From Macrostomum lignano (Eukaryota): 64,000 nt of DNA. The stretch is taken from assembly GCA_002269645.1 (NCBI GenBank), contig NIVC01001258.1, positions 1 to 64,000 on the forward strand. The letters run 5' to 3'. This document shows, in pieces, positions 8,588 to 47,053 of the stretch (the stretch's first letter is position 1; every line of letters starts with the position of its first letter). A program made the position numbers and the translations under genes. Below the pieces are notes generated by a model that worked only from the letters and a program-made list of their open reading frames with translations, searched no databases and had not been told where the DNA came from.

Positions 8588-8662
8588 GAAAAGCTACCGA
8601 GAAAGGACCATATGAGCAAAAATTTCGCCCGTATTTAAACAAAAAGTGATGCGTGCTGTGAC

Positions 8663-11356: not shown

Positions 11357-11860
11357 TTACAACCCCTTATTGTAATAGAGAACCTCGTCTGGTTTGCGAC
11401 CCTCCTTTAACAATCGATCCCTTAATGGGGCCTCCAAAGCCGACACCCGAACCGAAGCCATCTGAGGAAACAGTGCGCAGCACATGGGCGTGGCAAAGGT
11501 GAGAAATGCGCCACAGAGTAGCACCTGGATTGGAGCGCCTGACCAGGGAAATCTGGCTAGAAAGCCGGACCGCTCCAGCCGGTTCATCAGTATTGGCGGG
11601 ATCAGCATCCCGGGGGTTGCCATGCAGATCCGACTGAACACCACTTGGCCAATCGCGCGCTTGGCAGCGGCGGTGCTGTCACCCAACCGGCGGCCCTCGG
11701 AGTCCAGCACCGGGATGCCGGAGTCTAGCTCCTATGCAAACCAAGATCAAGGTATTGTAAACCTTTTTTGTTTTCGATACATATCGGCTCAATATTATCA
11801 GCGCCAACTGCCTTTCTGTCTTTCTGTCTGCTTGTCTGTCTGTCTGCTTGTCTGTCTGTT

Positions 11861-11891
<31 letters not shown>

Positions 11892-11944
11892 GTCTGTCTG
11901 TCTGTCTGTCTGTGTGTCTGCTTGTCTGTCTGTCTGTGTGTCTG

Positions 11945-12001
<57 letters not shown>

Positions 12002-13380
12002 GTCTGTCTGTCTGTCTGTGTGTCTGCTTGTCTGTCTGTCTGTCTGTCTGTCTCTGTCTGTCTGTCTGACACAGGAGGAAATCGCACAACAGCAGAGGCC
12101 AGCCGCATTACCTGGCTGCGCATGCAGGGAATATTGATGCAGTTGGCCACGGCCACGGCAGCAAAGGGCACGAAGCGGCCAATGAGCGGGGGGAAGCGGC
12201 CGACCTGCCGGTTAATCAGCAGGGCGGTCGACACCGCGCCGCCCGTGGCCAGCACGTAGCTGACGCCGAGTCTCTGCACTGAGATCGGTGAGTCTCCGCT
12301 CCTGTTAGTGTAATTAACCACGGCGTTAAATGTCTGATTGAACCACTGCCAGAATACCACTGCCGGGGTGCTTTTGTAAAATGTCATCATGCAGCCGGTG
12401 ATGGTCATGTTGCCAGGCACCTGAGGGGCGATGAGAAACGGTAAGTAACGGATCTATGTTGTAGTCTTAACACTTGTCTGAATACGACTGCCTTAATGAC
12501 GTAGCTACAAAGATATACTGTCTGTATGACGGCATTACAAGGATACTGTCTCAATGACGTCACTATAAGGATTATGTTTCAATGACGTCACTGCAAGAAT
12601 AGTGTCTTAATGACGTCACTACAGGGATACTGTCTCAATGACGTCACTATAAGGATTATGTTTCAATGACGTCACTGCAAGAATAGTGTCTTAATGACGT
12701 CACTACAGGGATACTGTCTCAATGACGTCACTATAAGGATTATGTCTCAATGACGTCACTGCAAGAATAGTGTCTTAATGACGTCACTACAGGGATACTG
12801 TCTCAATGACGTCACTATAAGGATTATGTTTCAATGACGTCACTGCAGGATAGTGCTTTAAGACGTCACTACAAGGATATCCCTTCTATGACGTCACTAC
12901 AAGGATACCGACTGTATCCTTCATAATAAGGATGATATTTTTTGGCGTCAATATATCGCGTCCAATTAGGTCACTACAAGGATACCCATCCTAATAGTTG
13001 TACTTTTAAAGATGGTGTATTTACAGCCTTAGAAAAATGTTTGTTATTAAGTTATTGACAATGACGTCACAATAAAACCAGCGCTGTGATGTTAGAACAT
13101 CCACCTGAAAGGACATCCTGCCGGGCAGGAACATCTTCTCTCCGGTGTCCGGGTGAAAGGCCGAATCATAGGTGTGCTTGGCCCGCCAAATGTCATCCGG
13201 CGTGAGTCCGGGCAGGTGTTCGCCAGCCTTGTACCTCACAACGATGTCCTTGGCTTTGTCCAATTCTTTACTAGTCTTGAACACGTTCAGTGGATTTGTG
13301 GTGATGAAGAAGTGCTTGGCCCGGCCTGTGTAGGTCGACTGGTCGAAGCGGGGTTTATCTAGATCGATTTTGGTCTCCAT
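11357..13380 (-). CDS. SFXN1: Sideroflexin (mitochondrial inner-membrane serine transporter family), 319 aa; exons 13380-13105, 12420-12112, 11731-11357
   Basis: Family motifs [88 protein letters not shown] and C-terminal YYNKGL. Both introns are GT-AG and phase 0. The symbol marks the family (SFXN1/3-like); the paralogue is not resolvable. Confidence 0.96.
11812..12069. repeat. (TCTG)n microsatellite in sideroflexin intron 2
   Basis: Direct observation. Confidence 0.97.
12495..12905. repeat. 28-bp minisatellite with an 84-bp trimeric higher-order unit; core units carry TGACGTCA; sideroflexin intron 1
   Basis: TGACGTCA every 28 bp from 12555 to 12835, plus 12889. Three alternating variants (ctataagg, ctgcaaga, ctacaggg). 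Confidence 0.95.
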
Positions 13381-13544
13381 GCTGGCTATTTTTAAATCGA
13401 AAATTTAACTCTGCAATTACGAGTATTACAGGTATTGTGCTCGCTAGTTAGTTGCACGTTGCCGTGGGCGCTGCAAGGCCGCAGGGAGGAATCAAGCAGT
13501 AAGGCCCAATCTGCTGACTCCTGATCCCACACACAGATACGCGT

Positions 13545-14463
13545 AATCTAGAGCTGCATCTATAATCGATCTAGCGCTAATCTAGAGCTGCATCTATAAT
13601 CGATCTAGCGCTAATCTAGGGCTGCATCTATAATCGATCTAGCGCTAATCTAGGGCTGCATCTATAATCGATCAAGCGCTAATCTAGAGCTGCATCTATA
13701 ATCGATCTAGCGCTAATCTAGGGCTGCATCTATAATCGATCTAGCGCTAATCTAGAGCTGCATCTATAATCGATCTAGCGCTAATCTAGAGCTGCATCTA
13801 TAATCGATCTAGCGCTAATCTAGAGATGCATCTAGAATCGATTTAGCGCTAATCTAGAGATGCATTTAATCGATCTAGCGCTAATGTAGAGCTGCATCTA
13901 TAATCGATCTAGCGCTAATCTAGAGATGCATCTAGAATCGATTTAGCGCTAATCTAGAGATGCATTTAATCGATCTAGCGCTAATCTAGAGATGCATCTA
14001 TATCGATCTAGCGCTAATCTAGGGCTGCATCTATATCGATCTAGCGTAATCTAGAGATGCATCTATAATCGATCTAGCGCTAATCTAGAGCTGCATCTAT
14101 AATCGATCTAGCGCTAATCTAGAGCTGCATCTAATCGATCTAGCGCTAATCTAGAGCTGCATCTATAATCGATCTAGCGCTAATCTAGAGCTGCATCTAT
14201 AATCGATCTAGCGCTAATCTAGAGCTGCATCTAATCGATCTAGCGCTAATCTAGAGCTGCATCTAATCGATCTAGCGCTAATCTAGAGCTGCATCTATAA
14301 TCGATCTAGCGCTAATCTAGAGCTGCATCTATAATCGATCTAGCGCTAATCTAGAGCTGCATCTAATCGATCTAGCGCTAATCTAGAGCTGCCTCTAATC
14401 GATCTGGCGCTAATCTAGAGCTGCATCTATAATCGATCTAGCGCTAATCTAGAGCTGCATCTA
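13545..14463. repeat. 34-bp minisatellite (TAATCTAGAGCTGCATCTATAATCGATCTAGCGC) upstream of sideroflexin
   Basis: Period 34 (13561 to 13595). Begins about 165 nt upstream of the ATG. Confidence 0.96.
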
Positions 14464-14950
14464 ACAGTCTCTGGCATCCATATAACTAACTCGCGGAAAA
14501 AAAACGACTGCACAAAAAGGAGTTTTGAGTTTATTTAAACTCAGCTTGCAATGTTATGAAAGCAATTCCGAGGAAGGTGTTGTGCACATGTTTTGAAAAT
14601 AAAATATCAAACTATTCGTGAAATGATAATCAAACTAGCGGTTGACCGTGTTGTGTTCGGTATAACATTGCATTCGTTGAGTTTTTAAAGAAAGTGAAAT
14701 CTTCAGTACCGCAAAAGAAGTCAGGATCTGTAGCGCAATAACAGGCAGATCAACTCGCTCTCCGCATCCCAACATAGTACATAATATCTCTATCGAAAGG
14801 CATTGTAATAATTATAAACTAAAACAATTGGATATTGCTAGAGTAAATAAAAAGCTTTTGTCGATGTAAAAACTCGCACTGGATAACTGTTACAAATTAA
14901 ATCATCGCTATAAACTATCATTATTGAAAATTCTCTGCCGTAAGATTATT

Positions 14951-15832
14951 AAATGAGCCCAAAATCTCACCTGTAAGATTTTAAATGAACCCTAAATCTC
15001 ACCCATGAGATTGTGAACCCCTAAATCTCACCCATGAGATTATTAAATGAACCCCTAAATCTCACCCATGAGATTATTAAATGAACCCCTAAATCTCATC
15101 CATGAGGTTATTAAATGAAGCCAGAATCTCACCCATGAGATTATTAAATGAACCCTAAATCTCACCCATGAGATTATTAAATGAACCCCTAAATCTCATC
15201 CATGAGGTTATTAAATGAAGCCAGAATCTCACCCATGAGATTATTAAATGAACCCTAAATCTCACCCATGAGATTATTAAATGAACCCCTAAATCTCATC
15301 CATGAGGTTATTAAATGAAGCCAGAATCTCACCCATGAGATTATTAAATGAACCCCTAAATCTCACCCATGAGATTATTAAATGAACCCCTAAATCTCAT
15401 CCATGAGGTTATTAAATGAAGCCAGAATCTCACCCATGAGATTATTAAATGAACCCTAAATCTCACCCATGAGATTAATAAATGAACCCCTAAATCTCAC
15501 CCATGAGATTATTAAATGAACCCTAAATCTCACCCATGAGGTTATTAAATGAAGCCAGAATCTCACCCATGAGATTATTAAATGAACCCTAAATCTCACC
15601 CATGAGATTATTAAATGAACCCTAAATCTCACCCATGAGGTTATTAAATGAAGCCAGAATCTCACCCATGAGATTATTAAATGAACCCTAAATCTCACCC
15701 ATGAGATTACTAAATCAACCCCTAAATCTCACCCATGAGATTATTAAATGAAGCCAGAATCTCACCCATGAGATTATTAAATCAAGCCAAAATCTCACCC
15801 ATGAGATTATTAAATCAAGCCAGAATCTCACC
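14951..15832. repeat. 33-34-bp minisatellite (AAATCTCACCCATGAGATTATTAAATGAACCCT)
   Basis: Tandem units, each containing the inverted repeat AATCTCA-CCCA-TGAGATT. Confidence 0.96.
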
Positions 15833-16039
15833 AATTTAATTGTTAAATATACCGGTGATCTCACCACGGATATTTATTAGATAAGTCGAATATAACTGAA
15901 CCCAGAATTTTTATATAAACCGAAATTCCCTCACTTCTCAATTTAGGAAAAATGAAAAAAACAAAACTGGAATAAACAATATAGCCTAGAAGCCCCATCT
16001 CTGCAGCACCTGCATGCTGCACAAGTTGATTAAAGTAAT

Positions 16040-19000
16040 TCAAGCTCTCTTGGCATCTCGCTCTCCATCAGCCCCGGTGGAGTCTGCATCGTACGGCCAA
16101 GGCTCCAGGTGCGCGAGGCCGTGCTCTCTGTACCAGCTGTTCAGCTCCCTGCCGGCCGCCTGCGATGCTTCAACGAATCCTTCGCGCGGCCGGGCCAGCC
16201 GAAAGAACCGATCGGACAGGACAGACAGGGGCGCGAACTCGGACTGGCATCCGGGCAGCTGAACGGCCCGGTCCTGATACAGCACCCGGCACCAGATTCT
16301 CTCCTGACTGGCCGTAGCACCTGCGGAACTACCATTGTCATTGGTGTAGAATTCGAACACGATTGCGGAACCAAATGGCGGCCAGCTGATGTCGGATCGG
16401 GGATCGAAGCCTAGGGCTAGCAGCACGGGCAGAAGCATCGAATCGTGAGATGAGTACAGCTCGAATCGATGGTGGTCGCCTCGGCCCGACGCAAGTCGGT
16501 CAACATTGCTGGCCAAGGTGTGCACCCAGGTGCCGATGCAGTACGGCAGGGCCTGGAGTGCAGGACAGGGGAGGCGACTGTTTCGACATCTAGTCTCCCA
16601 GCATCCGACATCTAGTCTCCCAGCATCCGACATCTAGTCTCCCAGCATGCGACATCTAGTCTCCCAGCAACTGACATCTAGTCTCCCAGCAACTGACATC
16701 TAGTCTCCCAGCATCTGACATCTAGTCTCCCAGCATCCGACATCTAGTCTCCCAGCAACTGACATCTAGTCTCCCAGCATCCGACATTTAGTCTCCCAGC
16801 ATCCGACATCTAGTCTCCTAGCATCTGACATCTAGTCTCCCAGCATCTGACATCTAGTCTCCCAGCATCTGACATCTAGTCTCCAAACATCCGACATCTA
16901 GTCTCCGAGCATCCGACATCTAGTCTCCCAGCATCTGACATCTAGTCTCCCAGCATCTGACATCTAGTCTCCCAGCATCTGACATCTAGACTCCAAACAT
17001 CCGACATCTAGTCTCCGAGCATCCGACATCTAGTCTCCCAGCATCCGACATCTAGTCTCCCAGCATCCGACATTTAGTCTCCCAGAATCCGATATCCAGT
17101 AATACAGCATCCGACAGCAAAATTAGCTAGGCTATAAGTATTCAATTATCAAATAGTACATGGACAGACTCATTGATCAACAATCCAGGACTCATCTTAG
17201 GACAGCCTAACAGCAGTCAAATCAGCCACACTACTCACTTCTTCCCAGATTTCGCAGGGCCCCATCTCCTCTGTGAGCAGTTCCAGAGCGCACAGTCTAT
17301 CCAGAGTCGGGCACAGCTTGGCCACGGGACCCGGCAAAGTAGATCCGTGAGCCAGTCTAGCCGACAGGTCATCTCTGGCAAAGTACAGCGGCACAAAGTT
17401 TTCCCTCGGCTTTTGTGTTTCGTTCCACGAGGGCATCGGCGAAGCGCGACCACCGTAGGAGGGAATGCCGAAGGCATTGGCCAGCTGCTGCCGAGTCGCC
17501 AAGTAGCCATCTAATCGGCTTAGCAGCGCGCTTGCGTTGGCCAGATTGAGATTTTGCAGCTCGGGGACTGTCCGAAAGTTTGGGAACAGATCCTCGTCGA
17601 TTAGAGAGCGAATTGCCACCCGGACAGTAGCTGGGGCGGCCTGCGCAGCAAATATCAAGCATAATAATATCACCGATTTTTTGCTTTGGGGATTTGAGAG
17701 TTGGGAAGGGAATTTTATTTCTTAGGGATTTTTGAGACTCGGAAAGGGGATTTTAAGCTTTTAGGGATTTCTGAGAGTTGGGAAGGGGATTTTTTAGCTT
17801 TTAGGGATTTCTGAGAGTTGGGAAGGGGATTTTTATCTCTAAGGGATTTTTGAGACTCGGAAAGGGGATTTTTAGCTTTTTGGGGATTTCTGAGAGTTGG
17901 GAAGGGGATTTTTATCTCTTAGGGATTTTTGAGACTCGGAAAGGGGATTTTTAGCTTTTGGGGATTTCTGAGAGTTGGGAAGGGGATTTTTATCTCTAAG
18001 GGATTTTTGAGACTCGGAAAGGGGATTTTTAGCTTTTTGGGGATTTCTGAGAGTTGGGAAGGGGATTTTTATCTCTAAGGGATTTTTGAGACTCGGAAAG
18101 GGGATTTTTAGCTTTTGGGGATTTCTGAGAGTTGGGAAGGGGATTTTTATCTCTTGGGGATTTCTAAGACTTGAAATGGGATTTTTAGCTTTTGGGGATT
18201 TCTGAGAGTTGGGAAGGGGATTTTTATCGCTTGGGATTTCTGGGAGTTGAAAATGGGATTTTCAGCTTTTGGGGATTTCTGAGAGTTGGGAAGGGGATTT
18301 TTATCTCTTGGGGATTTCTTGAAGTTGAAAATGGGATTTTTAGCTTTTGGGATTTTTATCTCTTGGGGATTTCTTGAAGTTGAAAATGGGATTTTTAGCT
18401 TTTGGGATTTTTATCTCTTGGGGATTTCTGAGAGTTGGGAAAGTGATTTTTAGCTTTTATGGATTTCTGAGAGTTGGGAAGGGGATTTTTATCTCTTAGG
18501 GCTTTTTGAGACTCGGAAAGGGGATTCTTAGCTTTTGGGGATTTTCAGCTTTGGGGACTTATAATACTATGCATGTAGAATGGGAGTTTGGGATGCATTT
18601 TGAAATGGATCCAACACAGGTCTATCTAGCCAAACTTCTCAGAGCACACACCGATGCTTCCAGCGACTCGCCTGGCTGAGCGTCCAGCAGTAGCCCAGCC
18701 AGCACGCACTGCAGCGACTGCACGCAGCGCAGTATGCTGGTGCTGCGACAGTACAGCCAGCCTCCGTAGTCTTCTTTGTGCTTACGAAGATTGTCGTTAA
18801 CCAGCTGACGGTAGTCTCGGCGAAGCCGCTGGCCCAAGCGGATCATGTCGGCCTGGCCGAGGCGGGTCAGAGAGCCCGGCTGGGCGCCGCCCAACAGGTA
18901 CTGCCGGTGCGGCCGCATCAGGCTGGGCTGCGAGCCCGGATGCAGCGGGTCGTACAGCTGCATCTGCGGTGGGGCGCACGGAGATCGGGGGCTGGCGAGA

Positions 19001-19799
19001 ACTGTTTCACTCTGGGTTACTTTTCAAAGTTTTACCCTAGAGATTTTACAAAACTCACTCTAGAAGATATCGGAAATCTCACCCAAACGATTTGGAAATC
19101 TCACCCTAACGATTCGGAAATATCACCCTTACAATTCTGGAAATCCCACCCTAACGATTCTGGAAATCTCACCCTAACGATTCTGGAAATCTCACCCTAA
19201 CGATTTGGAAATCTCACCCTAACAATTTGGAAATTTCACCCTAAACATTCTTGAAATCTCACCCTAACAATCTGGAAATCTCACTCTAAAGATTCTGGAA
19301 ATCTCACCCTAACAATCCGGAAATCTCACTCAAACAGTTTGAAAATCTGACTTCAAAAAATTGGAAATCTCACAATTTCAGAATTTATGAGCAGTAAGCT
19401 ACAAATCCTCCAGGCTAAAGTCCTCAAACCCAAATCTCAATAAAACTTAAGCAGACTCCCTACCTGCACGCCATCCATCTCAGCTAGCTGATAAGCCACA
19501 TCGGTTGGCCAGCGGAACTGATCGCCCAGATAGCCGGGCACCTTGTGCAGCGGCGTCCTGGCACCGTGGCGCATCAGCACGGACACTGAGGCCAGACTGA
19601 GCCCCGCTGGCTGGGAAGAACTCTTCCCTGGTAGTAGGCGCGCCCGCGGCAACTCAGCGTATCTGCTGGGGAAGAAATCCCCATTGCTAAAACTGTGGCT
19701 TTCTTCGGTACTGCTAGCGGAATTGGTGTTGGCTGCTGCCGCTGCTGTAGCGGCCGCTGCACTGGCGACTGCGAATAGCCGGGGGAGACCAGCTGGCAT
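16040..19799 (-). CDS. ACP6: Histidine acid phosphatase, lysophosphatidic acid phosphatase type 6-like, ~520 aa; exons 19799-19464, 18963-18652, 17640-17239, 16552-16040
   Basis: Catalytic RHGARTP motif, G.LT.LGQ..M..LG..LR motif, RSTS..RCVQS, and HD proton-donor motif (YSSHDS) followed by WPPF. All three introns are GT-AG and phase 0. A probable extra 5'UTR intron ends at CCGCAG just upstream of the ATG. ACP6 rather than another acid phosphatase is an inference. Confidence 0.85.
16585..17095. repeat. 22-bp minisatellite (GACATCTAGTCTCCCAGCATCC) in phosphatase intron 3
   Basis: Period 22 (16585 to 16607). Ends about 30 nt from the acceptor. Confidence 0.96.
17685..18555. repeat. ~39-bp minisatellite with ~78-bp dimers in phosphatase intron 2
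   Basis: Alternating GGGATTTCTGAGAGTTGGGAAGGGGATTTTTATCTC.. and GGGATTTTTGAGACTCGGAAAGGGGATTTTTAGCTT.. units. Confidence 0.93.
19040..19380. repeat. Degenerate 23-bp minisatellite (GAAATCTCACCCTAACGATTCTG) in phosphatase intron 1
   Basis: Visible tandem units. Confidence 0.9.
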
Positions 19800-19819
19800 T
19801 GATAGGCTGCGGAATGGGC

Positions 19820-19842
19820 ATAGATAGATAGATAGATTGATT

Positions 19843-19877
<35 letters not shown>

Positions 19878-19878
19878 T

Positions 19879-19912
<34 letters not shown>
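19820..19912. repeat. (GATA)n microsatellite just upstream of the phosphatase ATG
   Basis: Direct observation. Confidence 0.95.
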
Positions 19913-19913
<1 letters not shown>

Positions 19914-20137
19914 TTTTAAAGTCAATTGTTTCATATGGAACAAACTTATAGCAGCCAAAATTTAGTCAATTTTAAAACCCCTTTTTCCACATCTTGCTAG
20001 ATAAGGGAGAGAGAGAGGCAGAGGTTGGGATGGCTGTTTCATTGACAAAAGCAGACAAACTTTAAAAGTACACAGTGCAATTCAAGATTATCTTTGAGAC
20101 TCAAAATTTTACATAATTTCATCAAAATAGTTGAAGA

Positions 20138-22561: not shown

Positions 22562-24761
22562 AAGCCTGGTAATTATGAAAACTCTCAATGAGGACCACGA
22601 AAATTGATTTCTGTAGAATGAAAAGGCTAATACAAATATATATATAGATAAACTAAACCTGACTCACTGACTGACTGTGTTCGGTATTTAAATACTCATA
22701 CATGGCCCATAATAAGGAGTCAGGGACTTAGGTCAGGACTATACTATAATAATAAACTGAAGGCTACGAGAGATCATTTGCAAAACAATCTTTACTATTG
22801 GTCGATATGAATCGATCGTTTCTTGTGACTTAAGACAGAAGAACAATACGTGCTGCGCTGCGTGGCCCGGAACGGACACTTTTGCCCTTGCATAATATAG
22901 TAGTAACGTAAACCTGAAAGTATTAAGTTCAATTCAAAGAACATGGCATAATGAACTTTTTTACTTGATGTCATTAAAAGTTATACTATGCTTTAATTTA
23001 AAATATAAACAAATATTTTCTTTTTCAGCTTCTGATAAGTTGATAATATCTTTTAATTTTCTAGTTCCTGAATTAAATTCTGAACTTTGGTTTAATGCAT
23101 ACGACCGTTGAGATTTTTTATTCAAAATATTCGTACAGTAACTTAAGGCTCAGCGAAGCAAATGACACATACTAGATTCAAGACGCAACGAAACAAAATT
23201 TTACTTGTTTCTTTTACAAATTTTGCCTGGGCGTATGAAAAAACAATATGAAAATGAAAGTTTCAATATACAACTATATTTAAAATACACTGTACAACAG
23301 AGTAGTAACATGTTGCGAACGTTAGATAGATAGAATTAAAGAAATGTCGTCACTGCCAAAGATCAAATGCAATAATTGATTATGTGATGAAAAACGGACT
23401 ATTTCCTATCTCCGCTGTGTATTTTCTCCAGGCAATTGGTCTCCTACTAAAAGCTACACAATCTTTGAGTTTACGTCCTGTCGTTTTACTGTATGTACTA
23501 CAGTGTGGTCCGGGTCCGGTCATTGCAGTCATTGCCGGTGCCGGAGCGGGGGGCATAAGGCGGGCCACGTCAGGATGTCGGTCGTAAATTACACATATTA
23601 CTTAATTAGATTATATATCTCTAACCGAAGTTCAGCAGCAGACGTAGTAAAAATTGTCTATATAAGACTAAGAATTAATTATTAATTTGCGAAAGAAAAT
23701 GAATAAATGACTCCAAGGTCCCCAGCAATAGCTCCAGCAATAGAAAAAAACAAGGCAGCTGTGCCACTCGAGAAATAATATGCACTTTACAGATGTTGCT
23801 ATTGGTCCCGAGTTTGTGCCACGCAGTTTCAGCTTTGTGCCGGCTCGTTTTTTGTAGAAAACATCGATTAAAAGTACAAAAACACCGGAAACCTATTGCT
23901 GAAGTTATTGCTGAGTTCTAGCGACATGGAACAATGTCAAAAAGTTGTGCCGTTTTGAAAAAAACTTATTTGGCACATTACACGGTTGTGCCACACACAT
24001 TTAACGGTGCCATACCCATGGAAGCCACGTACGCCACAGATTATAAAATTGGAGTACATTACTGTACGTCCTCGTTAGTGAGGATGCGAAAAAACAAAAT
24101 GAGTAAATAAACCTAACAGTGTAACAGAGTTTGATACATAATTTTTCAAGTAAATATAAAAAATAGATATAATAGATATCACATCAATACACAAATGCAG
24201 ATACAGCCATCTCCTCAATCAGTACACACAGTGCATGCAGATCGAGTATCCTCAGAATGTCTTTGCTAGTCGCGAGCTCGTGCCCGCGGGCAAAACTACT
24301 GCAGTGTATATATTGAGCCTGAATCTGCAGGAATGCCGGCACCCATCCTATACCGATACCCCCTGCTGAGATATTTGCCCTAGTCTGCTGCAAGCCGGGC
24401 TGATGCTTTCAGGCTAAGACCCTTATCAGCAAGCTGCAGAATTATGAGCTGGGCATATTGCATATAGCTACTAACCCTCATATTGTCCTTCTTCCCAGGT
24501 GTTGGGTGAAACGCGGCTTATTTATCGATTTTCTGCTTCAAATCTCAGAAATCCCGAAATCTCATGCATGTGAAAAACTCATTATGCCATAATATAACCA
24601 GCCCAGATCTCCCTGATTCATTGGGGCAAAAGGGCTACGTGACAAATCGGGAGGAAGTGGATGCATTTTAAGACCCTCAAAGTCAGTCGAGAACCAGCCA
24701 TTTTCCAAGAAAGATTTTTTACGCCAAAGTTTTTGTAAAATAGTAGAAAAAATGTACGATC

Positions 24762-25484
<723 letters not shown>

Positions 25485-26134
25485 TAAAGCAGAGCCAGAT
25501 CCCTCATTAACCCGTGATTAACATTCCTCACCGTCTGCCTCTCTGGTTCCAACAGCCCAAAAATCAAGTGTGCACGCTTGCTCAGTGGGGGGGGGGGCAA
25601 AGCAAAATTCGCATAGAAACGAGCTCGCTGGGCGGGTCAAGTGGATTTCGAGGCGTTGGGACTGCAGAGAGGCGTGTCGGATTGCAGCGCATGTCGCCCT
25701 GAGCTGGCGGGCTGGCGGGAGGAGGCTGCGGACTCGGAGCAGGCAAAAATCGCCCAGTGTCTTTGCTGTCCTCTTCCATTGGCGGGCCGGCCCCTCTCGG
25801 CCTCTTCTCCAATCTCTACCCGCATTCAAAACCTTTTTTCACGATGCCGCGATGCCCCCAGAAAAGCGACTGTCGCCGCCCGCCTCTTTCCATCTGCTTC
25901 CTCGCTCTGCTCTTAAGCCCCCCCCCCCGCATTGCCCGAGTGCTTCGCGTCTGACAACTGCTAATTCTATCAGACTCCGCCCAGGACGAGTTGACGGTGC
26001 CTGAGTTGCTTTCGGGAGCGGTTGCAGATGCAGCTGGAGGACTCTGATCGAGCTGACGATATGGGCGACAGAGGCAGAGTGGCCGGAGCTGCCGAGACAC
26101 CGGTAGGGTTTCATTAACTGACGATCGTGCGAAA

Positions 26135-27234: not shown

Positions 27235-28669
27235 CCCCATCCCCACCGTCAGCCGCAGCAGCAGGGGCAGAAGAAGCGGCCCTCCTATCACGCGCTGGAC
27301 CTGTCCGAGCTGGAGCGGCAGTTCTCAGCCGGCCAGTCGGCCAACCTGGTGGTGGACGCCAACAGTGGCACCCTGCTGATCCACGAGGCCACCTGTCCGA
27401 GAAACCTTCGCGCCGATGTCATCCACCTGGTTGCCAGGTTCGGGGGCGATTTGAACGCATTGGACAAAGAGGGCAACACGGCGCTGCACCTGGCGCTGAG
27501 GCACGGTAGTCTGTCCTGCTTTCAGGTGAGGCATATTCGACTGCAGGAGGTTCGAGATCAGGTTGAGAGTGACGCGGGTTTATCATATCCCAAATTTCCT
27601 GTCCGAATGTGAAATTACCTGTCCGAATCCGAAATTATCTGTCCGAATCTGAAATTACCTGTCCGAATCCGAAATTATCTGTCCGAATCTGAAATTACCT
27701 GTCCGAATGTGAAATTACCTGCCCGAATCCGAAATTATCTGTCCGAATCTGAAATTACCTGTCCGAATCCGAAATTATCTGTCCGAATCTGAAATTACCT
27801 GTCCGAATGTGAAATTACCTGTCCGAATCCGAAATTATCTGTCCGAATCTGAAATTACCTGTCCGAATCTGAAATTACCTGTCCGAATCTGAAATTTAAC
27901 GTGGCCGAATCCGAAATCACCTGTCCGAATCCCAAATATTACCCGTCCGATATGAAATTACCTGTCCAAATCGAAAAAATTACCTGTCCGAATCTGAAAT
28001 TCAACGTGTCCGAATCTGAAATCTGACGTGTCCGAATCTGAAATTTGACGTGTCCGAATCTGAAATTACCTGTCCGAATCTGAAATTACCTGTCCGAATC
28101 TGAAATTACCTGTCCGAATCTGAAATTTAACGTGGCCGAATCCGAAATCACCTGTCCGAATCCCAAATATTACCCGTCCGATATGAAATTACCTGTCCAA
28201 ATCGAAAAAATTACCTGTCCGAATCTGAAATTCAACGTGTCCGAATCTGAAATTCAACGTGTCCGAATATGAAATTACCTGTCCGAATCAGAAATTATCT
28301 GTCCGAATGGGAAATTACCTGTCCGGATCCGAAATTATCTGTCCGAATCCGAAATTACCTGTCCGGATTCGAATTTACTTGTCTGTATCTGAAATTACCT
28401 TTCCGAATCCGAAATCTCACCTGTCCGAATTCCATACGTCTGATAGGCTCTTCTAGAGGAGGGCGCCAATCCCAACATCCCGGACGCTCGCGGCGATACT
28501 GTTGTCCACCTGTCGGCCACGCCGGACACCATCGACTATTTCAAAGCGGCGCTCCAACACGGCGGCGACTGTCGACTTGGCGACGCAAACGGCGACTCAA
28601 CGCTGCACCGCGTCTGCGCCGAAGCGCGGGTGGAGCTGGCCGGCCTCATCCTCGACGCCGAGCAGCAGC

Positions 28670-28713
<44 letters not shown>

Positions 28714-31700
28714 ATCGCCAACTTGCCGGGCTGGCGCGGCCGGACGCCGCTTCACTCGGCCGCCAGCAGCGGCGGCGGCGTCGACACGCGCGACCTCTTC
28801 GTCCTGCTGCTGCACGCCGGTGCCGATTTCGCCCGGCCGGACGACGACGGCTCGGCGCCAATCGACGTGGTGCTGGCGCGCGAGGACTGCGCCCTGCTGG
28901 AGAGCCTCGGTAAGTGCCTGGCCGTCGGGACAGACGATAGTGACGATGGCGACGGCCGGCTTGCCGAATTTCTGCGCGCTCTGCTCAGCCTGGCGACTCC
29001 GCCGCAGAAACCGAGACACGCGGCGCCGGTGTCGACGAATTCAACGCCGGACAACCCGTTGGAGCGGGCGGAGCTGCTGCAGGCGCTGTCGGCGGGCCTG
29101 GCCGAGCGGAATCCGCAGCTGCGCCGGCTGATGGCGCCGGCAGGGAGGGCGCTGAGCCTCGGCCTGCTGTCCGACCTGGAGTCCTACGGCTTGGTGGACG
29201 GCCTGGCCGAGTTGGTTGCCCAGCAGGTTCTGCTGCCGCAGGACGTCGGGCTGATGACGCAACTTGCCGAGATTGGAAGGGGTCGGCTGTGGCCGCTGCT
29301 GGCCGGCCGGGTGGAGCTCCGGGCGGAGGCGCTGCTGTACGCCAGGATTCAACGGCAGACGAAGGCGAGCGGCGTCAAGGCGCTGGTGCGACAGCAGTGC
29401 TTGGACAGGCGCACTGGGGAGCTCTGCGTCCAGAAGGCGAGCGGATTCGGTTTATAGATGTTCTCTAGATATCGTCTAGATGTTCTTTAGATATCGTTTA
29501 GATGTTCTGTAGATATCGTCTAGATGTTCTGTAGATATCGTCTAGATGTTCTGTAGATACTGTCTAGATGTTGTGTGTTGATATTGTCTAGTTGTTCTGT
29601 AGATATTGTCTAGATTCTCTGTAGATTTTGTCTAGATTCTCTGTAGATTTTGTCTAGATTCTCTGTAGATATTGTCTAGATTCTCTGTAGATATTGTCTA
29701 GATTCTCTGTAGATATTGTCTAGATTCTCTGTAGATATTGTCTAGATTCTCTGTAGATTTTGTCTAGATTCTCTGTAGATTTTGTCTAGATTCTCTGTAG
29801 ATTTTGTCTAGATTGCTAATACCGGTTGTTTCCCTGAATCATCCAGGTGAACTCGCTCATCGCCCGGGCCACCGGCTTCTGCCAGCTGGCCAGCGTCAAA
29901 ATCGCCGACAGCCCCGATGACGACGACACGGACGGTGCCTGGCCAGCGGACTGCCCGCGGCCGCAGCGCAGCCCCGCCCGCAGCCTGCCAGTCTGGTCGG
30001 TGCTGTCCGGCAGCCTTCACCTGGCGACCCGGCTGCTGCAGCTGGAGAGGCTGGACCCCATCCCGCTGGGCCTCTTGACCGCCCGCCTGATCCGCGGCCT
30101 CGCCCGCTGGCCGGGCGTCGGCGACGCCTTCTTGGACAGGGCGGCCGAGGCGGCCGATCGATGCGAACGCCTGGCCGCGGAGGCGTTGAAAACCGCGAAA
30201 GCGCTGGACGGCTCGCCGGGGCACTGGCTGACGCTCAGCTACCTACGCCGGCCCCTGCCGCGGTACGGCGGCTGCAGCCCGCTGGACCTCGCCGCCATCG
30301 GCCGCTGCGAGACCTTCGCCCGGCTGGACGCGGCCTGTCTGGCCTGGGAGGCCGCCTGGCGGGGCCCCTGGCTGGCCGAGCGGAGCCGCTTCGCCGACTG
30401 GGCGCTGGCCGACAGCCACGCGGCCGCGGAGGCCGCCTGTCCGAGACGGCCGGCGTCTGTTGGGGCGGCCGAGGAGGCGGCGCTGACGGCTACAGCAGGA
30501 GGCAGTGGGAAAACTGGGACTCGTCCAGGTGGGCTAGGGATGCTGGCTAGATTAGCAATCCATTCTATTCCTTCATCAGTGATCTTGACTAGATTAGCAA
30601 TTCATTCTATTCCTTCATCAGTGATGCTGGCTAGATTGGCAATCCATTCTATTTCTTCATCAGTGATATTGGTTAGATTAGCAATCCATTCTATTCCTTC
30701 ATCAGTGATGTTGGCTAGATTAGCAATCCATTCTATTCCTTCATCGGTGATGCTGGCTAGATTAGCAATTCATTCTATTCCTTCATCAGTGATGCTGGCT
30801 AGATTAGCAATCCATTCTATTCCTTCATCAGTGATGCTGGCTAGATCAGCAATCCATTCTATTCCTTCATCAGTGATGCTGGCTAGATCAGCAATCCATT
30901 CTATTCCTTCATCGGTGATGCTGGCTAGATTAGCAATCCATTCTATTTCTTCATCAGTGATGCTGGCTAGATCAGCAATCCATTCTATTCCTTCATCGGT
31001 GATGCTGGCTCTCCACCCTCAGTCGGCAGCCGCTTGTCCGCCGCCCTCTCCGAGTCGTTCAGTGGCCTCAGGCGGCCCAGCTGGAGGTTCCGGATGCACC
31101 TGCTGGCGCACCTGCTGCTCGGAGCCCTGCTCACTGCGGTCTGCCTGTCCGAACCGGTGGGCGGTCCCTGGCCGGCCGAGCTGACCTGTTACATCACCGG
31201 ACTCGGGCAGTTGGTCGAAGCTATCCGAGCGGCAGCTCGCGGCCGCCAGGTCAGAGTTTTGAGTCAGTTTGAGTCAGTTGAGTCAGTTTTGACCGACAGA
31301 GTCAGTCAGTCAGTCAGTCAGTCAGTCAGTCAGTCAGTCAGTCAGTCAGTCAGTCAGTCAGTCAGTCAGTCAGTCAGTCAGTCAGTCAGTCAGTCAGTCA
31401 GTCAGTCAGTCAGTCAGTCAGTCAGTCAGTCAGTCAGTCAGTCAGTCAGTCAGTCAGTCAGTCAGTCAGTCAGTCAGTCAGTCAGTCAGTCAGTCAGTCA
31501 GTCAGTCAGTCAGTCAGTCAGTCAGTCAGTCAGTCAGTCAGTCAGTCAGTCAGTCAGTCAGTCAGTCAGTCAGTCAGTCAGTCAGTCAGTCAGTCAGTCA
31601 GTCAGTCAGTCAGTCAGTCAGTCAGTCAGTCAGTCAGTCAGTCAGTCAGTCAGTCAGTCAGTCAGTCAGTCAGTCAGTCAGTCAGTCAGTCAGTCAGTCA

Positions 31701-33405
31701 GTCAGTCAGTCAGTCAGTCAGTCAGTCAGTCAGTCAGTCAGTCAGTCAGTCAGTCAGTCAGTCAGTCAGTCAGTCAGTCAGTCAGTCAGTCAGTCAGTCA
31801 GTCAGTCAGTCAGTCAGTCAGTCAGTCAGTCAGTCAGTCAGTCAGTCAGTCAGTCAGTCAGTCAGTCAGTCAGTCAGTCAGTCAGTCAGTCAGTCAGTCA
31901 GTCAGTCAGTCAGTCAGTCAGTCAGTCAGTCAGTCAGTCAGTCAGTCAGTCAGTCAGTCAGTCAGTCAGTCAGTCAGTCAGTCAGTCAGTCAGTCAGTCA
32001 GTCAGTCAGTCAGTCAGTCAGTCAGTCAGTCAGTCAGTCAGTCAGTCAGTCAGTCAGTCAGTCAGTCAGTCAGTCAGTCAGTCAGTCAGTCAGTCAGTCA
32101 GTCAGTCAGTCAGTCAGTCAGTCAGTCAGTCAGTCAGTCAGTCAGTCAGTCAGTCAGTCAGTCAGTCAGTCAGTCAGTCAGTCAGTCAGTCAGTCAGTCA
32201 GTCAGTCAGTCAGTCAGTCAGTCAGTCAGTCAGTCAGTCAGTCAGTCAGTCAGTCAGTCAGTCAGTCAGTCAGTCAGTCAGTCAGTCAGTCAGTCAGTCA
32301 GTCAGTCAGTCAGTCAGTCAGTCAGTCAGTCAGTCAGTCAGTCAGTCAGTCAGTCAGTCAGTCAGTCATTTAGTCGGCCAGTCTCACTCTCTGCACTCCA
32401 CAGGGCTGGTCGGACTGGTTGGCCGAGCTGGCCGAGGCGGCGAGTTTGGCGGCCGGAGCGGCCTGCCGAGCGGCCAGCCGGTCCCCGGCGGCGGCCTTGG
32501 CCGCTGCAGCCGCCCTTCACTGGCTGCGGCTGCTGCGCCCGCTTGGCGCTCTGGCGCCACCGCTAGGGCGCCACCTGCTGCTGATTGGCGCCCTACTCAG
32601 GCGCGACTTTGTCCCCCTGGCCACCATGGGGCTGTGCCTGGCCGGCGCCCTCGGGCTGGCTGGCCGGGTGCTGCTGGCTCAGCAACTGCAGCCGCCGCCG
32701 TCAGTCGGGCGAGTCCTGTTGGCAGCGCTGGCGGCGCTTGCGGGCGGCGAGATCGAGCCGCTGCACGCCATGGCTGGGAGCGTTGCGGCGGCGGCAGCAG
32801 CGAGCAACTTCAGCGATGGCTCCACCTGCGGCAAGCCGTCAGTCGTCCAGTGGCCCCTGCAGCTCGGCCCGCTGCTGGCTGTCTTGGCCGCCGGGCACCT
32901 GCTTCTGACAGCGGCCGCCGCTGGAGTCTTTGCCACCACGGCGGCCCGGCAGCGAGCCCGAAGCCAGCCGCTGTGGCTGATTGAGAGGCACCAGCTCGGC
33001 CGGCAGCTGCTGGGCCGGTCTCACTGGCCGCCGCCCTTCAACCTGCTGACTGGCGGCGTTGCTGCCGTTAGTGTCTGCTGCCGGCGGCTGCGGATGTCCA
33101 GCGATAGCAGCCAGGAGCCGCGGTCGTCGCCGGAGACTCCGCCGCAAAGGCTTCGCCGCAGTGGCGGCACCGAGCGGTTGCGGCAGCTGATGAGGTCGCG
33201 AGCTCGAAACCTGTTCCTGTTCTACCAGGCGGCCGCGCTCAGGGCGCACCCGCTGGGAGCTGGCGGAGCTGCCGAAGCTACCAGCGCTGCGGCCGCGGGC
33301 GGCACGGCGGAACTCCGCCAGCTGCTGAAGCGACTGACCGAGGCCTGCGACCTGCTGGGGCAGAGGCTGCCAGCCGAGACGGATTGGCTGGCAGATCGCA
33401 ACTGA
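27235..33405 (+). CDS. Divergent TRPM-like cation channel with N-terminal ankyrin repeats, >1060 aa, 5' exon(s) not found; exons 27235-27525, 28447-29436, 29847-30528, 31023-31249, 32404-33405
   Basis: 5-6 ankyrin repeats (EGNTALHLAL, RGDTVVHL, NGDSTLHRVC, RGRTPLHSAA). MHR4-like segment PIPLGLLTARLIRGLA..LRRPLPRYGGCSPLDLAA..WEAAWRG. Six hydrophobic segments, pore-like GGEI, and TRP-box region LWLIERHQL..WPPPFNLL. Exon phases are consistent (0,0,1,0) if the donor after 29436 is GC. Confidence 0.8.
27591..28432. repeat. 20-bp minisatellite (GTCCGAATCTGAAATTACCT) filling a channel intron
   Basis: About 40 visible units, ending ~15 nt before the acceptor at 28446. Confidence 0.96.
28670..28712 (+). 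repeat. Coding (GGC)n tract encoding poly-Gly inside an ankyrin repeat
   Basis: In frame: QQR-G(14)-IANL. Confidence 0.9.
29452..29812. repeat. 22-bp minisatellite (TCTAGATTCTCTGTAGATATTG) in a channel intron
   Basis: Direct observation. Confidence 0.95.
30535..31008. repeat. 42-bp minisatellite (GATGCTGGCTAGATTAGCAATCCATTCTATTCCTTCATCAGT), copy 1, in a channel intron
   Basis: About 11 units occupying almost the whole 494-nt intron. Confidence 0.97.
31300..32368. repeat. (GTCA)n microsatellite, ~1.07 kb, in a channel intron
   Basis: Direct observation; essentially perfect. Confidence 0.99.

Positions 33406-35151: not shown

Positions 35152-47053
<11,902 letters not shown>

What the first reader, a model, noticed from the sequence alone, without database searches (positions are those of the whole stretch)
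27235..33405. Ankyrin-repeat N-terminus fused to a TRPM-type channel core with a degenerate gate
Seen: one phase-consistent exon chain joins 5-6 ankyrin repeats (one split by poly-Gly) to an MHR4/pre-S1-like region, S1-S6 and a TRP box. Knowledge: canonical TRPM channels have MHR1-4 and no ankyrin repeats, whereas TRPC/V/A/N have them. The motif LRRPLPRYGGCSPLDLA resembles TRPM LLT..L..W...TCL.LA. S6 reads HLLLTAAAAGVF where TRPM/TRPC have NLLIAMF. Inference: a chimeric or lineage-specific TRP subfamily, possibly non-conducting or regulatory, with MHR1-3 replaced by ankyrins.
Basis: partly seen in the sequence, partly recalled or inferred. Interest (0 to 1): 0.72.

Follow-up and report, generated by a model that had tools for sequence, protein, structure and literature searches.

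The report
Divergent flatworm-type ankyrin-TRPM-like channel gene
This is a real spliced animal gene for a very diverged member of an already described flatworm channel family (ankyrin repeats in front of a TRPM-type channel, as in the meclonazepam target TRPM_MCLZ), unusual mainly because its pore region no longer resembles that of its relatives.

Summary
Five phase-consistent exons (27235-33405, + strand) encode six ankyrin repeats, an MHR3/4-like helical region, S1-S6, a TRP helix and a C-terminal helix. A tentative ATG exon lies at 26061-26102. The frame is open for 1077 codons, against a mean of 16.5 stops in shuffles.

The architecture is not a local chimera. The non-ankyrin part matches Macrostomum lignano proteins with the same layout (E 3.6e-46), then trematode and cestode proteins that carry the diagnostic residues published for TRPM_MCLZ (Smp_333650). 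That published flatworm 'TRPM-like' channel has ankyrin repeats in place of MHR1/2-SLOG. One M. lignano paralog encodes the whole layout in a single exon. An intact member matches only TRPM structures in the PDB (TRPM3, 1.3e-41).

The new element is the divergence:
- GARP residues make up 42% and FYMINK residues 8%, against about 22% and 26% in relatives.
- The pore module (S4-S5 linker to S6) scores 0.2 bits against the family profile. Control members score 158-204 bits.
- The S1-S4, TRP and MHR parts still score 21, 36 and 98 bits.

Whether the protein conducts ions cannot be decided here.

Verdict: a new, strongly diverged variant of a known kind, of moderate to low interest.

The parts
26061..26102 (+). 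Tentative first coding exon (MGDRGRVAGAAETP), ATG with G at -3 and +4, donor CCG|GTAGGG, phase 0
   Evidence: Read from the sequence. Exon 1 has no ATG and relatives start only about 15-30 aa upstream of the first repeat. There is no transcript evidence.
27235..27525 (+). Exon 1: N-terminal segment, ankyrin repeat 1 and the first half of repeat 2
   Evidence: Acceptor cag|CCC and donor CAG|gtgagg. tblastn of M. lignano P0002/P0019 hits 27301-27528. Pfam Ank.
28447..29436 (+). Exon 2: ankyrin repeats 2-6 and the MHR3-like helical region in one exon
   Evidence: The join ...SCFQ|ALLEEGANPN restores a canonical ankyrin repeat. tblastn E 3e-21 to 8e-21. AF2 pLDDT is 80-90.
28672..28713 (+). (GGC)14 poly-Gly tract in the loop after ankyrin repeat 4
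   Evidence: Trematode and cestode relatives have an insert at the same site.
29847..30528 (+). Exon 3: end of the MHR3-like region, the MHR4-like region, and a variable linker; the pre-S1 hydrophobic elbow of relatives is missing
   Evidence: tblastn E 2e-28 with P0019; alignment.
29970..30365 (+). MHR4-like region (aa 483-614), including LRRPLPRYGGCSPLDLA
   Evidence: Matches the canonical TRPM of Ptychodera flava (P0018 aa 446-572, which lies within its PF25508 hit). E 9.9e-4 against 1.84e9 proteins; tblastn 4e-7.
31023..31249 (+). Exon 4: pre-S1 helix, S1, S2 (LVEAIRA in place of the family's LVEEINE)
   Evidence: RRPSWRFRMHLLAHLLL aligns with IPCVKFRMHVTAHISFVLLL.
32404..33405 (+). Exon 5: S3, S4, pore module, TRP helix, post-TRP helix, C-terminal helix, stop codon
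   Evidence: tblastn E 1e-9 with P0019. PDB phmmer finds only TRPM chains plus two chance hits.
32557..32946 (+). Degenerate pore module (S4-S5 linker, S5, pore helix/filter AGGEIE, S6 GHLLLTAAAAGVF), aa 796-925
   Evidence: 0.2 bits against the family profile, compared with 158-204 bits for control members. 11 of 28 conserved positions are kept. AF2 pLDDT is below 50 for aa 835-898.
32947..33042 (+). TRP helix and the following WPPPFN motif
   Evidence: Aligned with TRPM2 and TRPM3 and with the family. The TRP plus C-terminal part scores 36.5 bits against the family profile.
27526..28446 (+). Intron 1, almost wholly a 20-bp minisatellite (27592-28430)
29437..29846 (+). Intron 2 (GC-AG), with a 22-bp minisatellite at 29455-29814
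30529..31022 (+). Intron 3 (phase 1), with a 42-bp minisatellite at 30539-31010. It has no stop in the exon-3 frame, but reading through it would shift the frame relative to exon 4 (S1).
31250..32403 (+). Intron 4, (AGTC)271 at 31300-32383

Best explanation
The locus is an intact, spliced protein-coding gene in an animal genome. The species is unidentified. It is probably a free-living flatworm or a near relative, and it is not Macrostomum lignano. The gene encodes a very diverged member of the flatworm ankyrin-TRPM-like channel family, the clade that contains the meclonazepam-activated channel TRPM_MCLZ.

In this family an N-terminal ankyrin-repeat domain stands where canonical TRPM and TRPS have MHR1/2 (SLOG). 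The rest is TRPM-type: MHR3/4-like helices, pre-S1, the S1-S4 voltage-sensor-like domain, S5-pore-S6, the TRP helix and C-terminal helices. The protein would be expected to assemble as a tetramer.

Shown here: the gene model is coherent, homology is colinear over the full length, and the family is TRPM-type.

Also shown: the window's copy has undergone a gene-wide shift towards Gly/Ala/Arg/Pro and Leu at the expense of Phe/Tyr/Met/Ile/Asn/Lys. This has erased recognisable similarity in the pore module. The ankyrin domain, MHR3/4, S1-S4, the TRP helix and the post-TRP helix remain recognisable.

Inferred: constraint on the ancestral gated pore is relaxed or changed. The protein is still made and still folds as a TRPM-like subunit. 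It either forms an atypical pore with a wide or leaky gate (the S6 Asn becomes Thr, the gate Ile becomes Ala, and the S2/S3 Ca2+-site residues are lost) or it acts as a non-conducting subunit alongside canonical paralogs. I cannot choose between these two.
For: Gene model:
- The frame is open for 1077 codons; shuffles average 16.5 stops and 0 of 2000 had none.
- Splice phases are consistent.
- Codon-position GC is 0.74/0.56/0.84.

Homology:
- HMMER against 1.84e9 representative proteins gave 18 hits. The best were P0001 at 3.6e-46, P0002 at 5.8e-43 and P0003 at 3.1e-32.
- P0001-P0008, P0010 and P0011 are M. lignano proteins and P0009 is an unnamed Logan contig; next come Opisthorchis, Schistocephalus and Dicrocoelium, and one canonical TRPM.
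- P0001-P0008 have Ank plus PF25508 and, except P0005, Ion_trans; P0013-P0015 and P0042 have Ank plus Ion_trans.
- tblastn of P0002 and P0019 hits all five exons in order and nothing else in the window.
- M. lignano P0003 is encoded by a single 3363-bp exon, so ankyrin and channel parts form one ORF there.

TRPM type:
- The non-ankyrin part of P0002 has only TRPM chains among its best 60 PDB hits: TRPM3 1.3e-41, TRPM1 1.1e-39, Nematostella TRPM2 3.9e-36.
- The window's own weak PDB hits are TRPM2, TRPM3 and TRPM1 (E 0.06-0.4).
- The top Foldseek hits for the AF2 model are TRPM2, TRPM3, TRPM5 and TRPM7.
- In an NJ tree the window protein falls inside the ankyrin-TRPM-like family in 185 of 200 bootstraps. 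The family plus the canonical TRPM separates from TRPC4 in 200 of 200.

Link to TRPM_MCLZ:
- Cestode P0046 has Phe at the S4 site and Lys-Ser in the TRP region. Trematode P0014 has Tyr and Arg-Thr. These match the published natural variants (one search compared).
- Lengths of 1321-1413 aa compare with 1380 aa for Sm.TRPM_MCLZ.

Divergence.
Against: - There is no transcript evidence. The start exon and the GC donor are inferred.
- Pfam finds nothing beyond the ankyrin repeats in the window protein itself.
- The k-mer-seeded protein search found nothing.
- The direct TRPM signal for the window's TM part is weak (E 0.06-0.4); the assignment rests largely on transitivity through relatives.
- The tree uses NJ with one canonical TRPM, three TRPC4-like sequences and no TRPS, and the window protein sits on a long branch (basal in 111 of 200 bootstraps).
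- The extreme composition and the pore decay also fit a gene that is on its way to being lost.
Confidence: 0.78

Rival explanations
1. Pseudo-channel: the protein is expressed and folds, but it no longer conducts ions. It acts as a regulatory or scaffolding subunit, for example by co-assembling with canonical paralogs through the conserved cytosolic domains. It overlaps with one branch of the best explanation.
For: - The pore module scores 0.2 bits, while S1-S4, TRP and MHR score 21, 36 and 98 bits. In controls the pore is the best-scoring module, at 158-204 bits.
- The S6 Asn, the gate Ile, the S4-S5 linker GPKLKM, the pore-helix aromatics, one of the two pore-loop Cys and the pre-S1 elbow are lost.
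- The ORF is nevertheless kept open.
Against: - The filter Gly-Glu, the S6 Phe, the TRP Trp and the PPPF motif are kept.
- Hydrophobic S5 and S6 helices are present.
- Only 4 of 20 conserved FYMINK positions are kept, against about 70% of the other conserved positions, so much of the pore loss is compositional.
- No functional data exist.
Confidence: 0.25
2. Decaying or recently dead gene: the copy is drifting under GC-biased substitution and will be lost. The open frame is a remnant.
For: - It keeps the lowest share of family-conserved residues, 59% against 84-99% for full-length members.
- There are several deletions in the TM loops and the pre-S1 elbow is missing.
- GARP residues make up 42%.
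- The gene was not found in any protein collection.
Against: - There is no stop or frameshift in 3.2 kb across six exons, with about 16 stops expected.
- The splice sites are intact.
- Ankyrin consensus residues (TPLH, GA-D/N), MHR4 and the TRP helix are still recognisable.
- The three codon positions differ clearly in GC content.
Confidence: 0.15
3. Two adjacent genes, an ankyrin-repeat protein and a separate channel gene, were wrongly joined.
For: There is no cDNA, and 410-1154-bp repeat-filled introns separate the parts.
Against: - Exon 2 alone carries ankyrin repeats 2-6 and the MHR3-like region.
- All exons are colinear with single proteins of relatives, one of which is a single-exon gene.
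- The downstream exons have no in-frame ATG that leaves a plausible start in front of MHR4.
Confidence: 0.03
4. The channel core belongs to an ankyrin-bearing TRP subfamily (TRPC, TRPN, TRPA or TRPV) and only resembles TRPM.
For: N-terminal ankyrin repeats are typical of those subfamilies. NOMPC appears at Foldseek rank 32, and TRPC4-like proteins were weak hits of the family profile.
Against: - PDB sequence hits for the window's core are TRPM chains plus two unrelated chance hits, and the best 60 for P0002's core are all TRPM.
- PF25508 (TRPM MHR3/4) is found in relatives.
- The TRPM-style TRP helix is followed by PPPF.
- TRPC4 separates in 200 of 200 bootstraps.
Confidence: 0.02

Closest known systems
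Flatworm 'TRPM-like' clade containing TRPM_MCLZ (Schistosoma mansoni Smp_333650; PMC10788528, PMC11731825, PMC12861061)
   Same: - N-terminal ankyrin repeats in place of MHR1/2-SLOG.
- No NUDT9H domain or kinase domain.
- TRPM-type S1-S6 and TRP helix.
- Homologous and colinear over the full length with trematode and cestode members (P0014, P0042, P0046).
   Different: - The window protein is shorter: about 1077 aa against 1380.
- Identity is only 16-20%.
- It lacks the pre-S1 elbow.
- It has Arg at the S4 position that tunes meclonazepam sensitivity (His, Tyr or Phe in parasites).
- Its pore module is unrecognisable to the family profile.
- TRPM_MCLZ is a proven cation channel. This protein is untested.
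- The gene has at least 5 exons, against 3.
Macrostomum lignano ankyrin/TRPM-like paralogs, annotated as hypothetical (e.g. PAA86244.1 = P0019, A0A1I8J777 = P0002, PAA64338.1 = P0003)
   Same: - These are the best hits (E 3.6e-46 to 3e-32).
- Same six-repeat ankyrin domain, MHR3/4-like region, TM core, TRP helix and post-TRP 'YQA..LR' helix.
   Different: - Identity is 25-27% overall, and 16-17% in the pore.
- The relatives keep LLLNVIVAMFS and WQFEKFDLIEEF.
- They have ordinary composition (GARP about 22%).
- They are intronless or have one intron of about 100 bp.
- The loci examined share no synteny with the window.
Canonical TRPM channels (TRPM1-8; Pfam LSDAT_euk + PF25508 + Ion_trans)
   Same: MHR4, pre-S1 helix, S1-S6 topology, filter Gly-Glu as in TRPM3/TRPM7, TRP helix followed by PPPF, TRPM-like fold.
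   Different: - No SLOG/MHR1/2; there are bona fide ankyrin repeats instead.
- The S2/S3 Ca2+-site residues and the S6 N-L-L-I-A-M-F motif are not kept.
TRPS (TRP soromelastatin, ced-11-like; PMC7306681)
   Same: A sister-type relation to TRPM is conceivable for the family.
   Different: TRPS has SLOG and Nudix domains and no ankyrin repeats (PMC7306681). None of this fits the window protein. No TRPS sequence was available for a tree.
TRPC/TRPN/TRPA/TRPV
   Same: An ankyrin-repeat domain N-terminal to a 6-TM TRP core.
   Different: The window's core sequence matched no solved TRPC, TRPN, TRPA or TRPV chain, and none was among the best 60 for P0002. TRPC4-like sequences form the outgroup in 200 of 200 bootstraps.

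Membership tests
Flatworm ankyrin-TRPM-like clade (TRPM_MCLZ type) | N-terminal ankyrin-repeat domain in place of MHR1/2-SLOG | tested here: met
   Pfam Ank families at E 3e-15. Six helix pairs in the AF2 model. No SLOG hit in the protein or in the 64-kb window.
Flatworm ankyrin-TRPM-like clade (TRPM_MCLZ type) | Full-length colinear homology with known members | tested here: met
   E 3.6e-46 to 1e-9 with M. lignano, Opisthorchis, Schistocephalus and Dicrocoelium proteins. Alignments. tblastn over all exons.
Flatworm ankyrin-TRPM-like clade (TRPM_MCLZ type) | Groups with the clade rather than with canonical TRPM or TRPC in a tree | tested here: met
   NJ on 457 columns: 185 of 200 bootstraps. 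Limits: long branch, one canonical TRPM only, no TRPS.
Flatworm ankyrin-TRPM-like clade (TRPM_MCLZ type) | Conserved pore module (GPKLKM linker, F-Y..VGEY pore helix/filter, LLLN..A.FS S6) | tested here: not met
   0.2 bits against 158-204 bits in controls. 11 of 28 conserved positions kept. Only G..L, D..P, GE, C and F remain.
Flatworm ankyrin-TRPM-like clade (TRPM_MCLZ type) | Functions as a ligand-gated cation channel (meclonazepam-type pocket in S1-S4/TRP) | not testable with these tools
   The S4 position equivalent to Sm H946 is Arg (HWLRLLR). Function needs expression and recording.
Flatworm ankyrin-TRPM-like clade (TRPM_MCLZ type) | Host lineage is Platyhelminthes | tested here: inconclusive
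   The species was not identified. The GFPT exon is at most 81% identical to any database protein, including M. lignano.
Canonical TRPM | MHR1/2 (SLOG, Pfam LSDAT_euk) | tested here: not met
   Absent from the window protein and from the relatives scanned. Present in the canonical control P0018.
Canonical TRPM | MHR3/MHR4 (Pfam PF25508) | tested here: met
   The window protein has no direct Pfam hit. However, aa 483-614 match P0018 aa 446-572, which lies within its PF25508 hit. Relatives hit PF25508 at profile positions of about 63-255.
Canonical TRPM | TRPM-type 6-TM core with a TRP helix | tested here: met
   Directly weak: TRPM2, TRPM3 and TRPM1 at E 0.06-0.4. Top Foldseek hits are TRPM. 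Strong through P0002: TRPM3 at 1.3e-41.
Canonical TRPM | S6 motif N-L-L-(I/V)-A-M-F with the Asn and the hydrophobic gate residue | tested here: not met
   LLLTAAAAGVF. HMMER aligns Thr with the Asn and Ala with the gate Ile of TRPM2.
Canonical TRPM | C-terminal coiled coil | tested here: inconclusive
   AF2 predicts a helix at aa 1043-1076, but pLDDT is below 50 for 1027-1056 and 1065-1077.
TRPS (soromelastatin) | SLOG plus C-terminal Nudix (NUDT9H), no ankyrin repeats | tested here: not met
   No SLOG or Nudix Pfam hit, and ankyrin repeats are present. Definition taken from PMC7306681.
TRPC/TRPN/TRPA/TRPV | TM core and TRP domain most similar to that subfamily | tested here: not met
   The window's core matched no such PDB chain, and none was among the best 60 for P0002. 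TRPC4 is the outgroup in 200 of 200 bootstraps.

The most novel reading that the evidence does not exclude
The gene encodes a 'pseudo-TRP'. It is an expressed ankyrin-TRPM-like subunit in which the cytosolic scaffold and the voltage-sensor-like domain stay under selection while the ion pathway has been given up. It would work as a non-conducting regulatory or adaptor subunit and would have arisen in a lineage where GC-biased substitution rewrites weakly constrained protein segments. A side reading is that its minisatellite-filled introns were gained recently in an ancestrally intron-poor gene.
Probability: 0.2. Interest if true: 0.6.

Novelty: new variant of a known kind. Interest (0 to 1): 0.33.

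Why it matters
The ankyrin-TRPM-like architecture contradicts the textbook rule that TRPM and TRPS channels lack ankyrin repeats. It is already documented for flatworms, where TRPM_MCLZ is an anthelmintic drug target.

This locus adds three things:
- The family reaches a further, unsampled lineage outside M. lignano and the parasites.
- It is an extreme example of how far a member can drift. The pore, normally the best conserved module, is the least conserved here, while the scaffold persists.
- It illustrates GC-driven amino-acid replacement that could mislead motif-based calls of 'dead' channels.

If the protein proved to be a non-conducting subunit, it would be a useful natural experiment on what the TRPM scaffold does apart from conducting ions.

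Tried and rejected
- Pfam on the non-ankyrin parts of the window protein, at E up to 10: nothing.
- k-mer-seeded search of 5.8e9 proteins with aa 252-1063: nothing. The same tool with a family profile returned only 14 proteins and no TRPM, so it could not supply a broad set for a phylogeny.
- Exact look-ups of the last-exon ORFs in the contig collection: not on record.
- Species identification through the GFPT exon: best identity 81%, not diagnostic.
- Rfam and tRNA scans of the window: no hits.
- The bacterial promoter/terminator scan downstream of the stop is irrelevant for a eukaryotic gene.
- Synteny with the M. lignano P0003 and P0004 loci: none. Intron positions are not shared.
- Supplementary sequences for Smp_333650 were not held. 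The link to TRPM_MCLZ therefore rests on diagnostic residues and protein length, not on a direct alignment.
- Shared flanks between the two copies of the 42-bp minisatellite: none.
- A donor at 28910/28911 (G|GTAAGT) inside exon 2 was considered and rejected, because the sequence after it aligns with relatives.


Full report
**What is in the sequence**

The window is eukaryotic: GC-rich exons sit in AT-richer DNA packed with minisatellites. On the + strand, five exons join in a single frame with splice phases 0, 0, 1 and 0:
- 27235-27525
- 28447-29436
- 29847-30528
- 31023-31249
- 32404-33405

Three introns are GT-AG. Intron 2 needs a GC donor (AAG|GCGAGC). The alignment with relatives favours that donor over a GT site 9 nt upstream.

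Exon 1 has no ATG. A short exon at 26061-26102 (ATGGGC...CCG|GTAGGG, phase 0), inside a GC-rich stretch, is a plausible start but is unverified. With it the product is 1077 aa.

The frame has no stop in 1077 codons. The other five frames of the same exons hold 8-24 stops. Dinucleotide shuffles average 16.5, and 0 of 2000 shuffles had none. Reading through intron 3 would shift the frame before S1, so splicing is required.

**Domains**

- Pfam finds only ankyrin families, at E 3e-15 to 1e-9. The PDB sequence search finds DARPins and ankyrins at down to 2.6e-55.
- The AlphaFold2 model was built on a 17-sequence family alignment (mean pLDDT 68.7, pTM 0.50). It shows six ankyrin helix pairs (aa 57-270). 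Helical domains follow at aa 279-460 and 483-614 with pLDDT of 80-92. The S1-S4 region scores about 70-87.
- The model has a low-confidence pore region (aa 835-898, pLDDT below 50) and a long S6-TRP helix.
- The (GGC)14 poly-Gly tract lies in the loop after repeat 4. Trematode and cestode relatives have a 60-70-aa insert at the same place.
- Hydropathy gives clear S1, S5 and S6 segments.

**Relatives**

The k-mer-seeded search found nothing. A full HMMER scan of 1.84 billion representative proteins, using aa 252-1063 of the 1063-aa five-exon product (= aa 266-1077 of the 1077-aa model), gave 18 hits:
- The best ten named hits are Macrostomum lignano proteins annotated as hypothetical (3.6e-46, 5.8e-43, 3.1e-32 and weaker).
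- Next come Opisthorchis, Schistocephalus and Dicrocoelium proteins.
- The weakest hit is a canonical TRPM from Ptychodera flava.

The relatives have the same layout. P0001-P0008 have Ank repeats, a partial PF25508 'TRPM2-like domain' (profile positions of about 63-255 of 257, that is MHR3/4) and, except P0005, Ion_trans. The parasite and Logan relatives P0013-P0015 and P0042 have Ank repeats and Ion_trans. None has the SLOG domain.

The window protein aligns colinearly with them from the first ankyrin repeat to the post-TRP helix (NLFLFYQAAALR against VYLLSLYYQALAFR). tblastn of two M. lignano members hits all five exons in order and nothing else in the 64 kb. The canonical TRPM hits only the MHR4 exon (29970-30365), so no SLOG exon lies in the window.

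M. lignano P0003 is encoded by one uninterrupted 3363-bp exon. In the family, therefore, the ankyrin and channel parts are demonstrably one ORF. In the window, exon 2 alone spans ankyrin repeats 2-6 and the MHR3-like region.

**TRPM type**

- The non-ankyrin part of the intact relative P0002 has only TRPM chains among its best 60 PDB hits. They are TRPM3 at 1.3e-41, TRPM1 at 1.1e-39, Nematostella TRPM2 at 3.9e-36, then TRPM2, 7, 5, 4 and 8. A single alignment runs from MHR4 to the TRP helix.
- The window protein's own PDB hits are weak but are the same molecules: TRPM2 at 0.06, and TRPM3 and TRPM1 at 0.14-0.25, covering S5-S6-TRP.
- The top Foldseek hits for the model are TRPM2, TRPM3, TRPM5 and TRPM7. 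NOMPC appears only at rank 32.
- In an NJ tree on 457 columns the window protein falls inside the ankyrin-TRPM-like family in 185 of 200 bootstraps. The family plus the canonical TRPM separates from TRPC4-like sequences in 200 of 200.
- The window protein sits on a long branch: basal in 111 of 200 bootstraps and sister to the Macrostomum set in 75 of 200. The tree lacks TRPS and has only one canonical TRPM.

**Already known**

Himmel et al. (PMC7306681) and the 2026 TRPM survey (PMC13143021) state that TRPM and TRPS lack ankyrin repeats and always carry MHR1-4. The parasitology literature, however, describes exactly this layout for TRPM_MCLZ (Smp_333650):
- It is a functional meclonazepam-activated cation channel of 1380 aa, encoded in 3 exons.
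- It 'lacks the NH2-terminal MHR1/2 or SLOG domain' and has ankyrin repeats instead.
- It is placed in a 'TRPM-like' clade next to the other flatworm TRPMs (PMC10788528, PMC11731825, PMC12861061).

I could not obtain the Smp_333650 sequence. The parasite hits nevertheless carry the published natural variants:
- Phe at the key S4 site and Lys-Ser in the TRP region in the cestode.
- Tyr and Arg-Thr in the trematode.
- An over-long Opisthorchis gene model, which would fit the reported duplicated exon 3 (my inference).

These come compared. I therefore treat those hits as TRPM_MCLZ orthologues.

**What is unusual here**

The window protein is the most diverged member.

1. It keeps 61 of 104 positions that are at least 80% conserved in the family (59%). 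Full-length members keep 84-99%.
2. By module, it keeps 20/28 ankyrin positions, 18/25 MHR, 11/20 S1-S4, 11/28 pore and 9/12 TRP plus C-terminal.
3. A profile of nine family members, built without the window protein, scores its modules as follows. Four members left out of the profile serve as controls.

| Module | Window protein | Controls |
|---|---|---|
| MHR | 97.7 bits | not scored |
| S1-S4 | 21.2 bits | 118-165 bits |
| Pore (aa 796-925) | 0.2 bits, no better than shuffles | 158-204 bits |
| TRP plus C-terminal | 36.5 bits | 59-91 bits |

4. The module that is best conserved in the family is therefore the one erased here.
5. Specific losses are:
   - the second Glu and the Glu/Gln of the S2 motif (VEEINE becomes VEAIRA) and the S3 Asn, which are the TRPM Ca2+-site positions;
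   - the S4-S5 linker GPKLKM (now GRHLLL);
   - the pore-helix aromatics;
   - one of the two pore-loop Cys;
   - the S6 Asn (now Thr) and the gate Ile (now Ala);
   - the hydrophobic pre-S1 elbow (about 40 aa);
   - shortened S2-S3, S3-S4 and S5-pore loops.
6. Kept are the filter Gly-Glu, Cys886, the S6 Phe, the S4 Trp-x-Arg, the TRP Trp, PPPF, and the post-TRP Gln and Arg.
7. In an AF2 control run on P0002 with a re-alignment of the same 17 sequences, the pore helix scores about 63-79 and pTM is 0.68. For the window protein the pore helix is below 50 and pTM is 0.50.

**Cause of the divergence**

- The protein is 42% Gly/Ala/Arg/Pro and 8% Phe/Tyr/Met/Ile/Asn/Lys. The twelve full-length relatives have 18-25% and 23-33%.
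- GC at codon positions 1/2/3 is 0.74/0.56/0.84. The neighbouring GFPT and sideroflexin exons share the high GC3 (0.64-0.82) but not the high GC1 and GC2.
- Of the family-conserved positions, the window protein keeps 4/20 FYMINK, 26/38 GARP and 39/55 others. In the pore, 11 of the 28 conserved positions are FYMINK, and one is kept.
- Much of the 'degenerate gate' is therefore the local face of a gene-wide GC-driven replacement (F to L, M to L, K to R, N to S/T/A, I/Y to A/V/L). This replacement hits the FYMINK-rich pore hardest.
- My inference is that such a shift is possible only where purifying selection on residue identity is weak. Constraint on the ancestral pore is thus relaxed or changed, while the open frame shows the protein is still needed or was until very recently.

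**Verdict**

It is a known flatworm family, not a new chimera. Only MHR1/2 is replaced by ankyrin repeats. Whether the protein conducts ions is undecided.

My estimates for function are:
- a working but atypical pore, about 0.35-0.4;
- a non-conducting subunit, about 0.25;
- a decaying gene, about 0.15-0.2;
- the remainder unresolved.

The source species is unknown. Its GFPT exon is at most 81% identical to any database protein, including M. lignano.

Noticed in passing
window 1-64000 (e.g. 2-8587, 35247-38925, 24759-25484, 39292-40113): About 26.7 kb (about 42%) of the window is tandem repeat at TRF score of at least 200. This includes an 8.6-kb array of a 20-bp unit (438 copies) at the window start, a 3.7-kb array of an 18-bp unit, and long (ATCT)n, (AGTC)n and (CTGT)n tracts.
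   Followed up: partly
window 11360-19961, 27526-32403, 40108-46958: Nearly every intron of all four recognisable genes holds its own minisatellite, which makes up most of the intron. The genes are sideroflexin (- strand), a histidine acid phosphatase-like gene (-), the TRPM-like gene (+) and GFPT (-). By contrast, the M. lignano paralogs of the TRPM-like gene are intronless or have one intron of about 100 bp. Whether these introns are recent gains was not tested.
   Followed up: partly
window 30539-31010 and 43323-44202: The same 42-bp minisatellite unit (identical consensus, rotated) fills intron 3 of the TRPM-like gene and part of a GFPT intron 12 kb away. Both arrays have the same orientation on the + strand, although the two genes lie on opposite strands. 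The flanks are unrelated.
   Followed up: partly
window 61547-62404 (-): A 286-aa ORF with GC 0.70 and an Ala/Leu/Arg/Gly-rich product has no Pfam hit. Its codon-position GC (0.77/0.56/0.79) resembles that of the TRPM-like gene. It may be a second gene with the same compositional shift.
   Followed up: partly
window 52090-52509 (+), 54605-55523 (-), 49456-50349 (-): Transposon remnants: a mariner-type transposase fragment (PF01359, E 4e-18), Tc1-like ORF fragments, and a 298-aa ORF without a Pfam hit.
   Followed up: partly
window 58554-60056 (+): A 501-aa Ser/Arg-rich ORF has no Pfam hit. It may be an SR-type or low-complexity protein exon.
   Followed up: no
window 8415-9074 (-): A 220-aa ORF abuts the 20-bp minisatellite. 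Its C-terminal part is translated repeat (…GRPCLLVGAPVSWWAPLSLG…). It has no Pfam hit.
   Followed up: no
proteins P0168-P0170 (M. lignano UniRef models): Three M. lignano family members show intermediate GARP content (32-34%) and gaps at conserved positions. They could be frameshifted gene models or further compositionally shifted paralogs.
   Followed up: no
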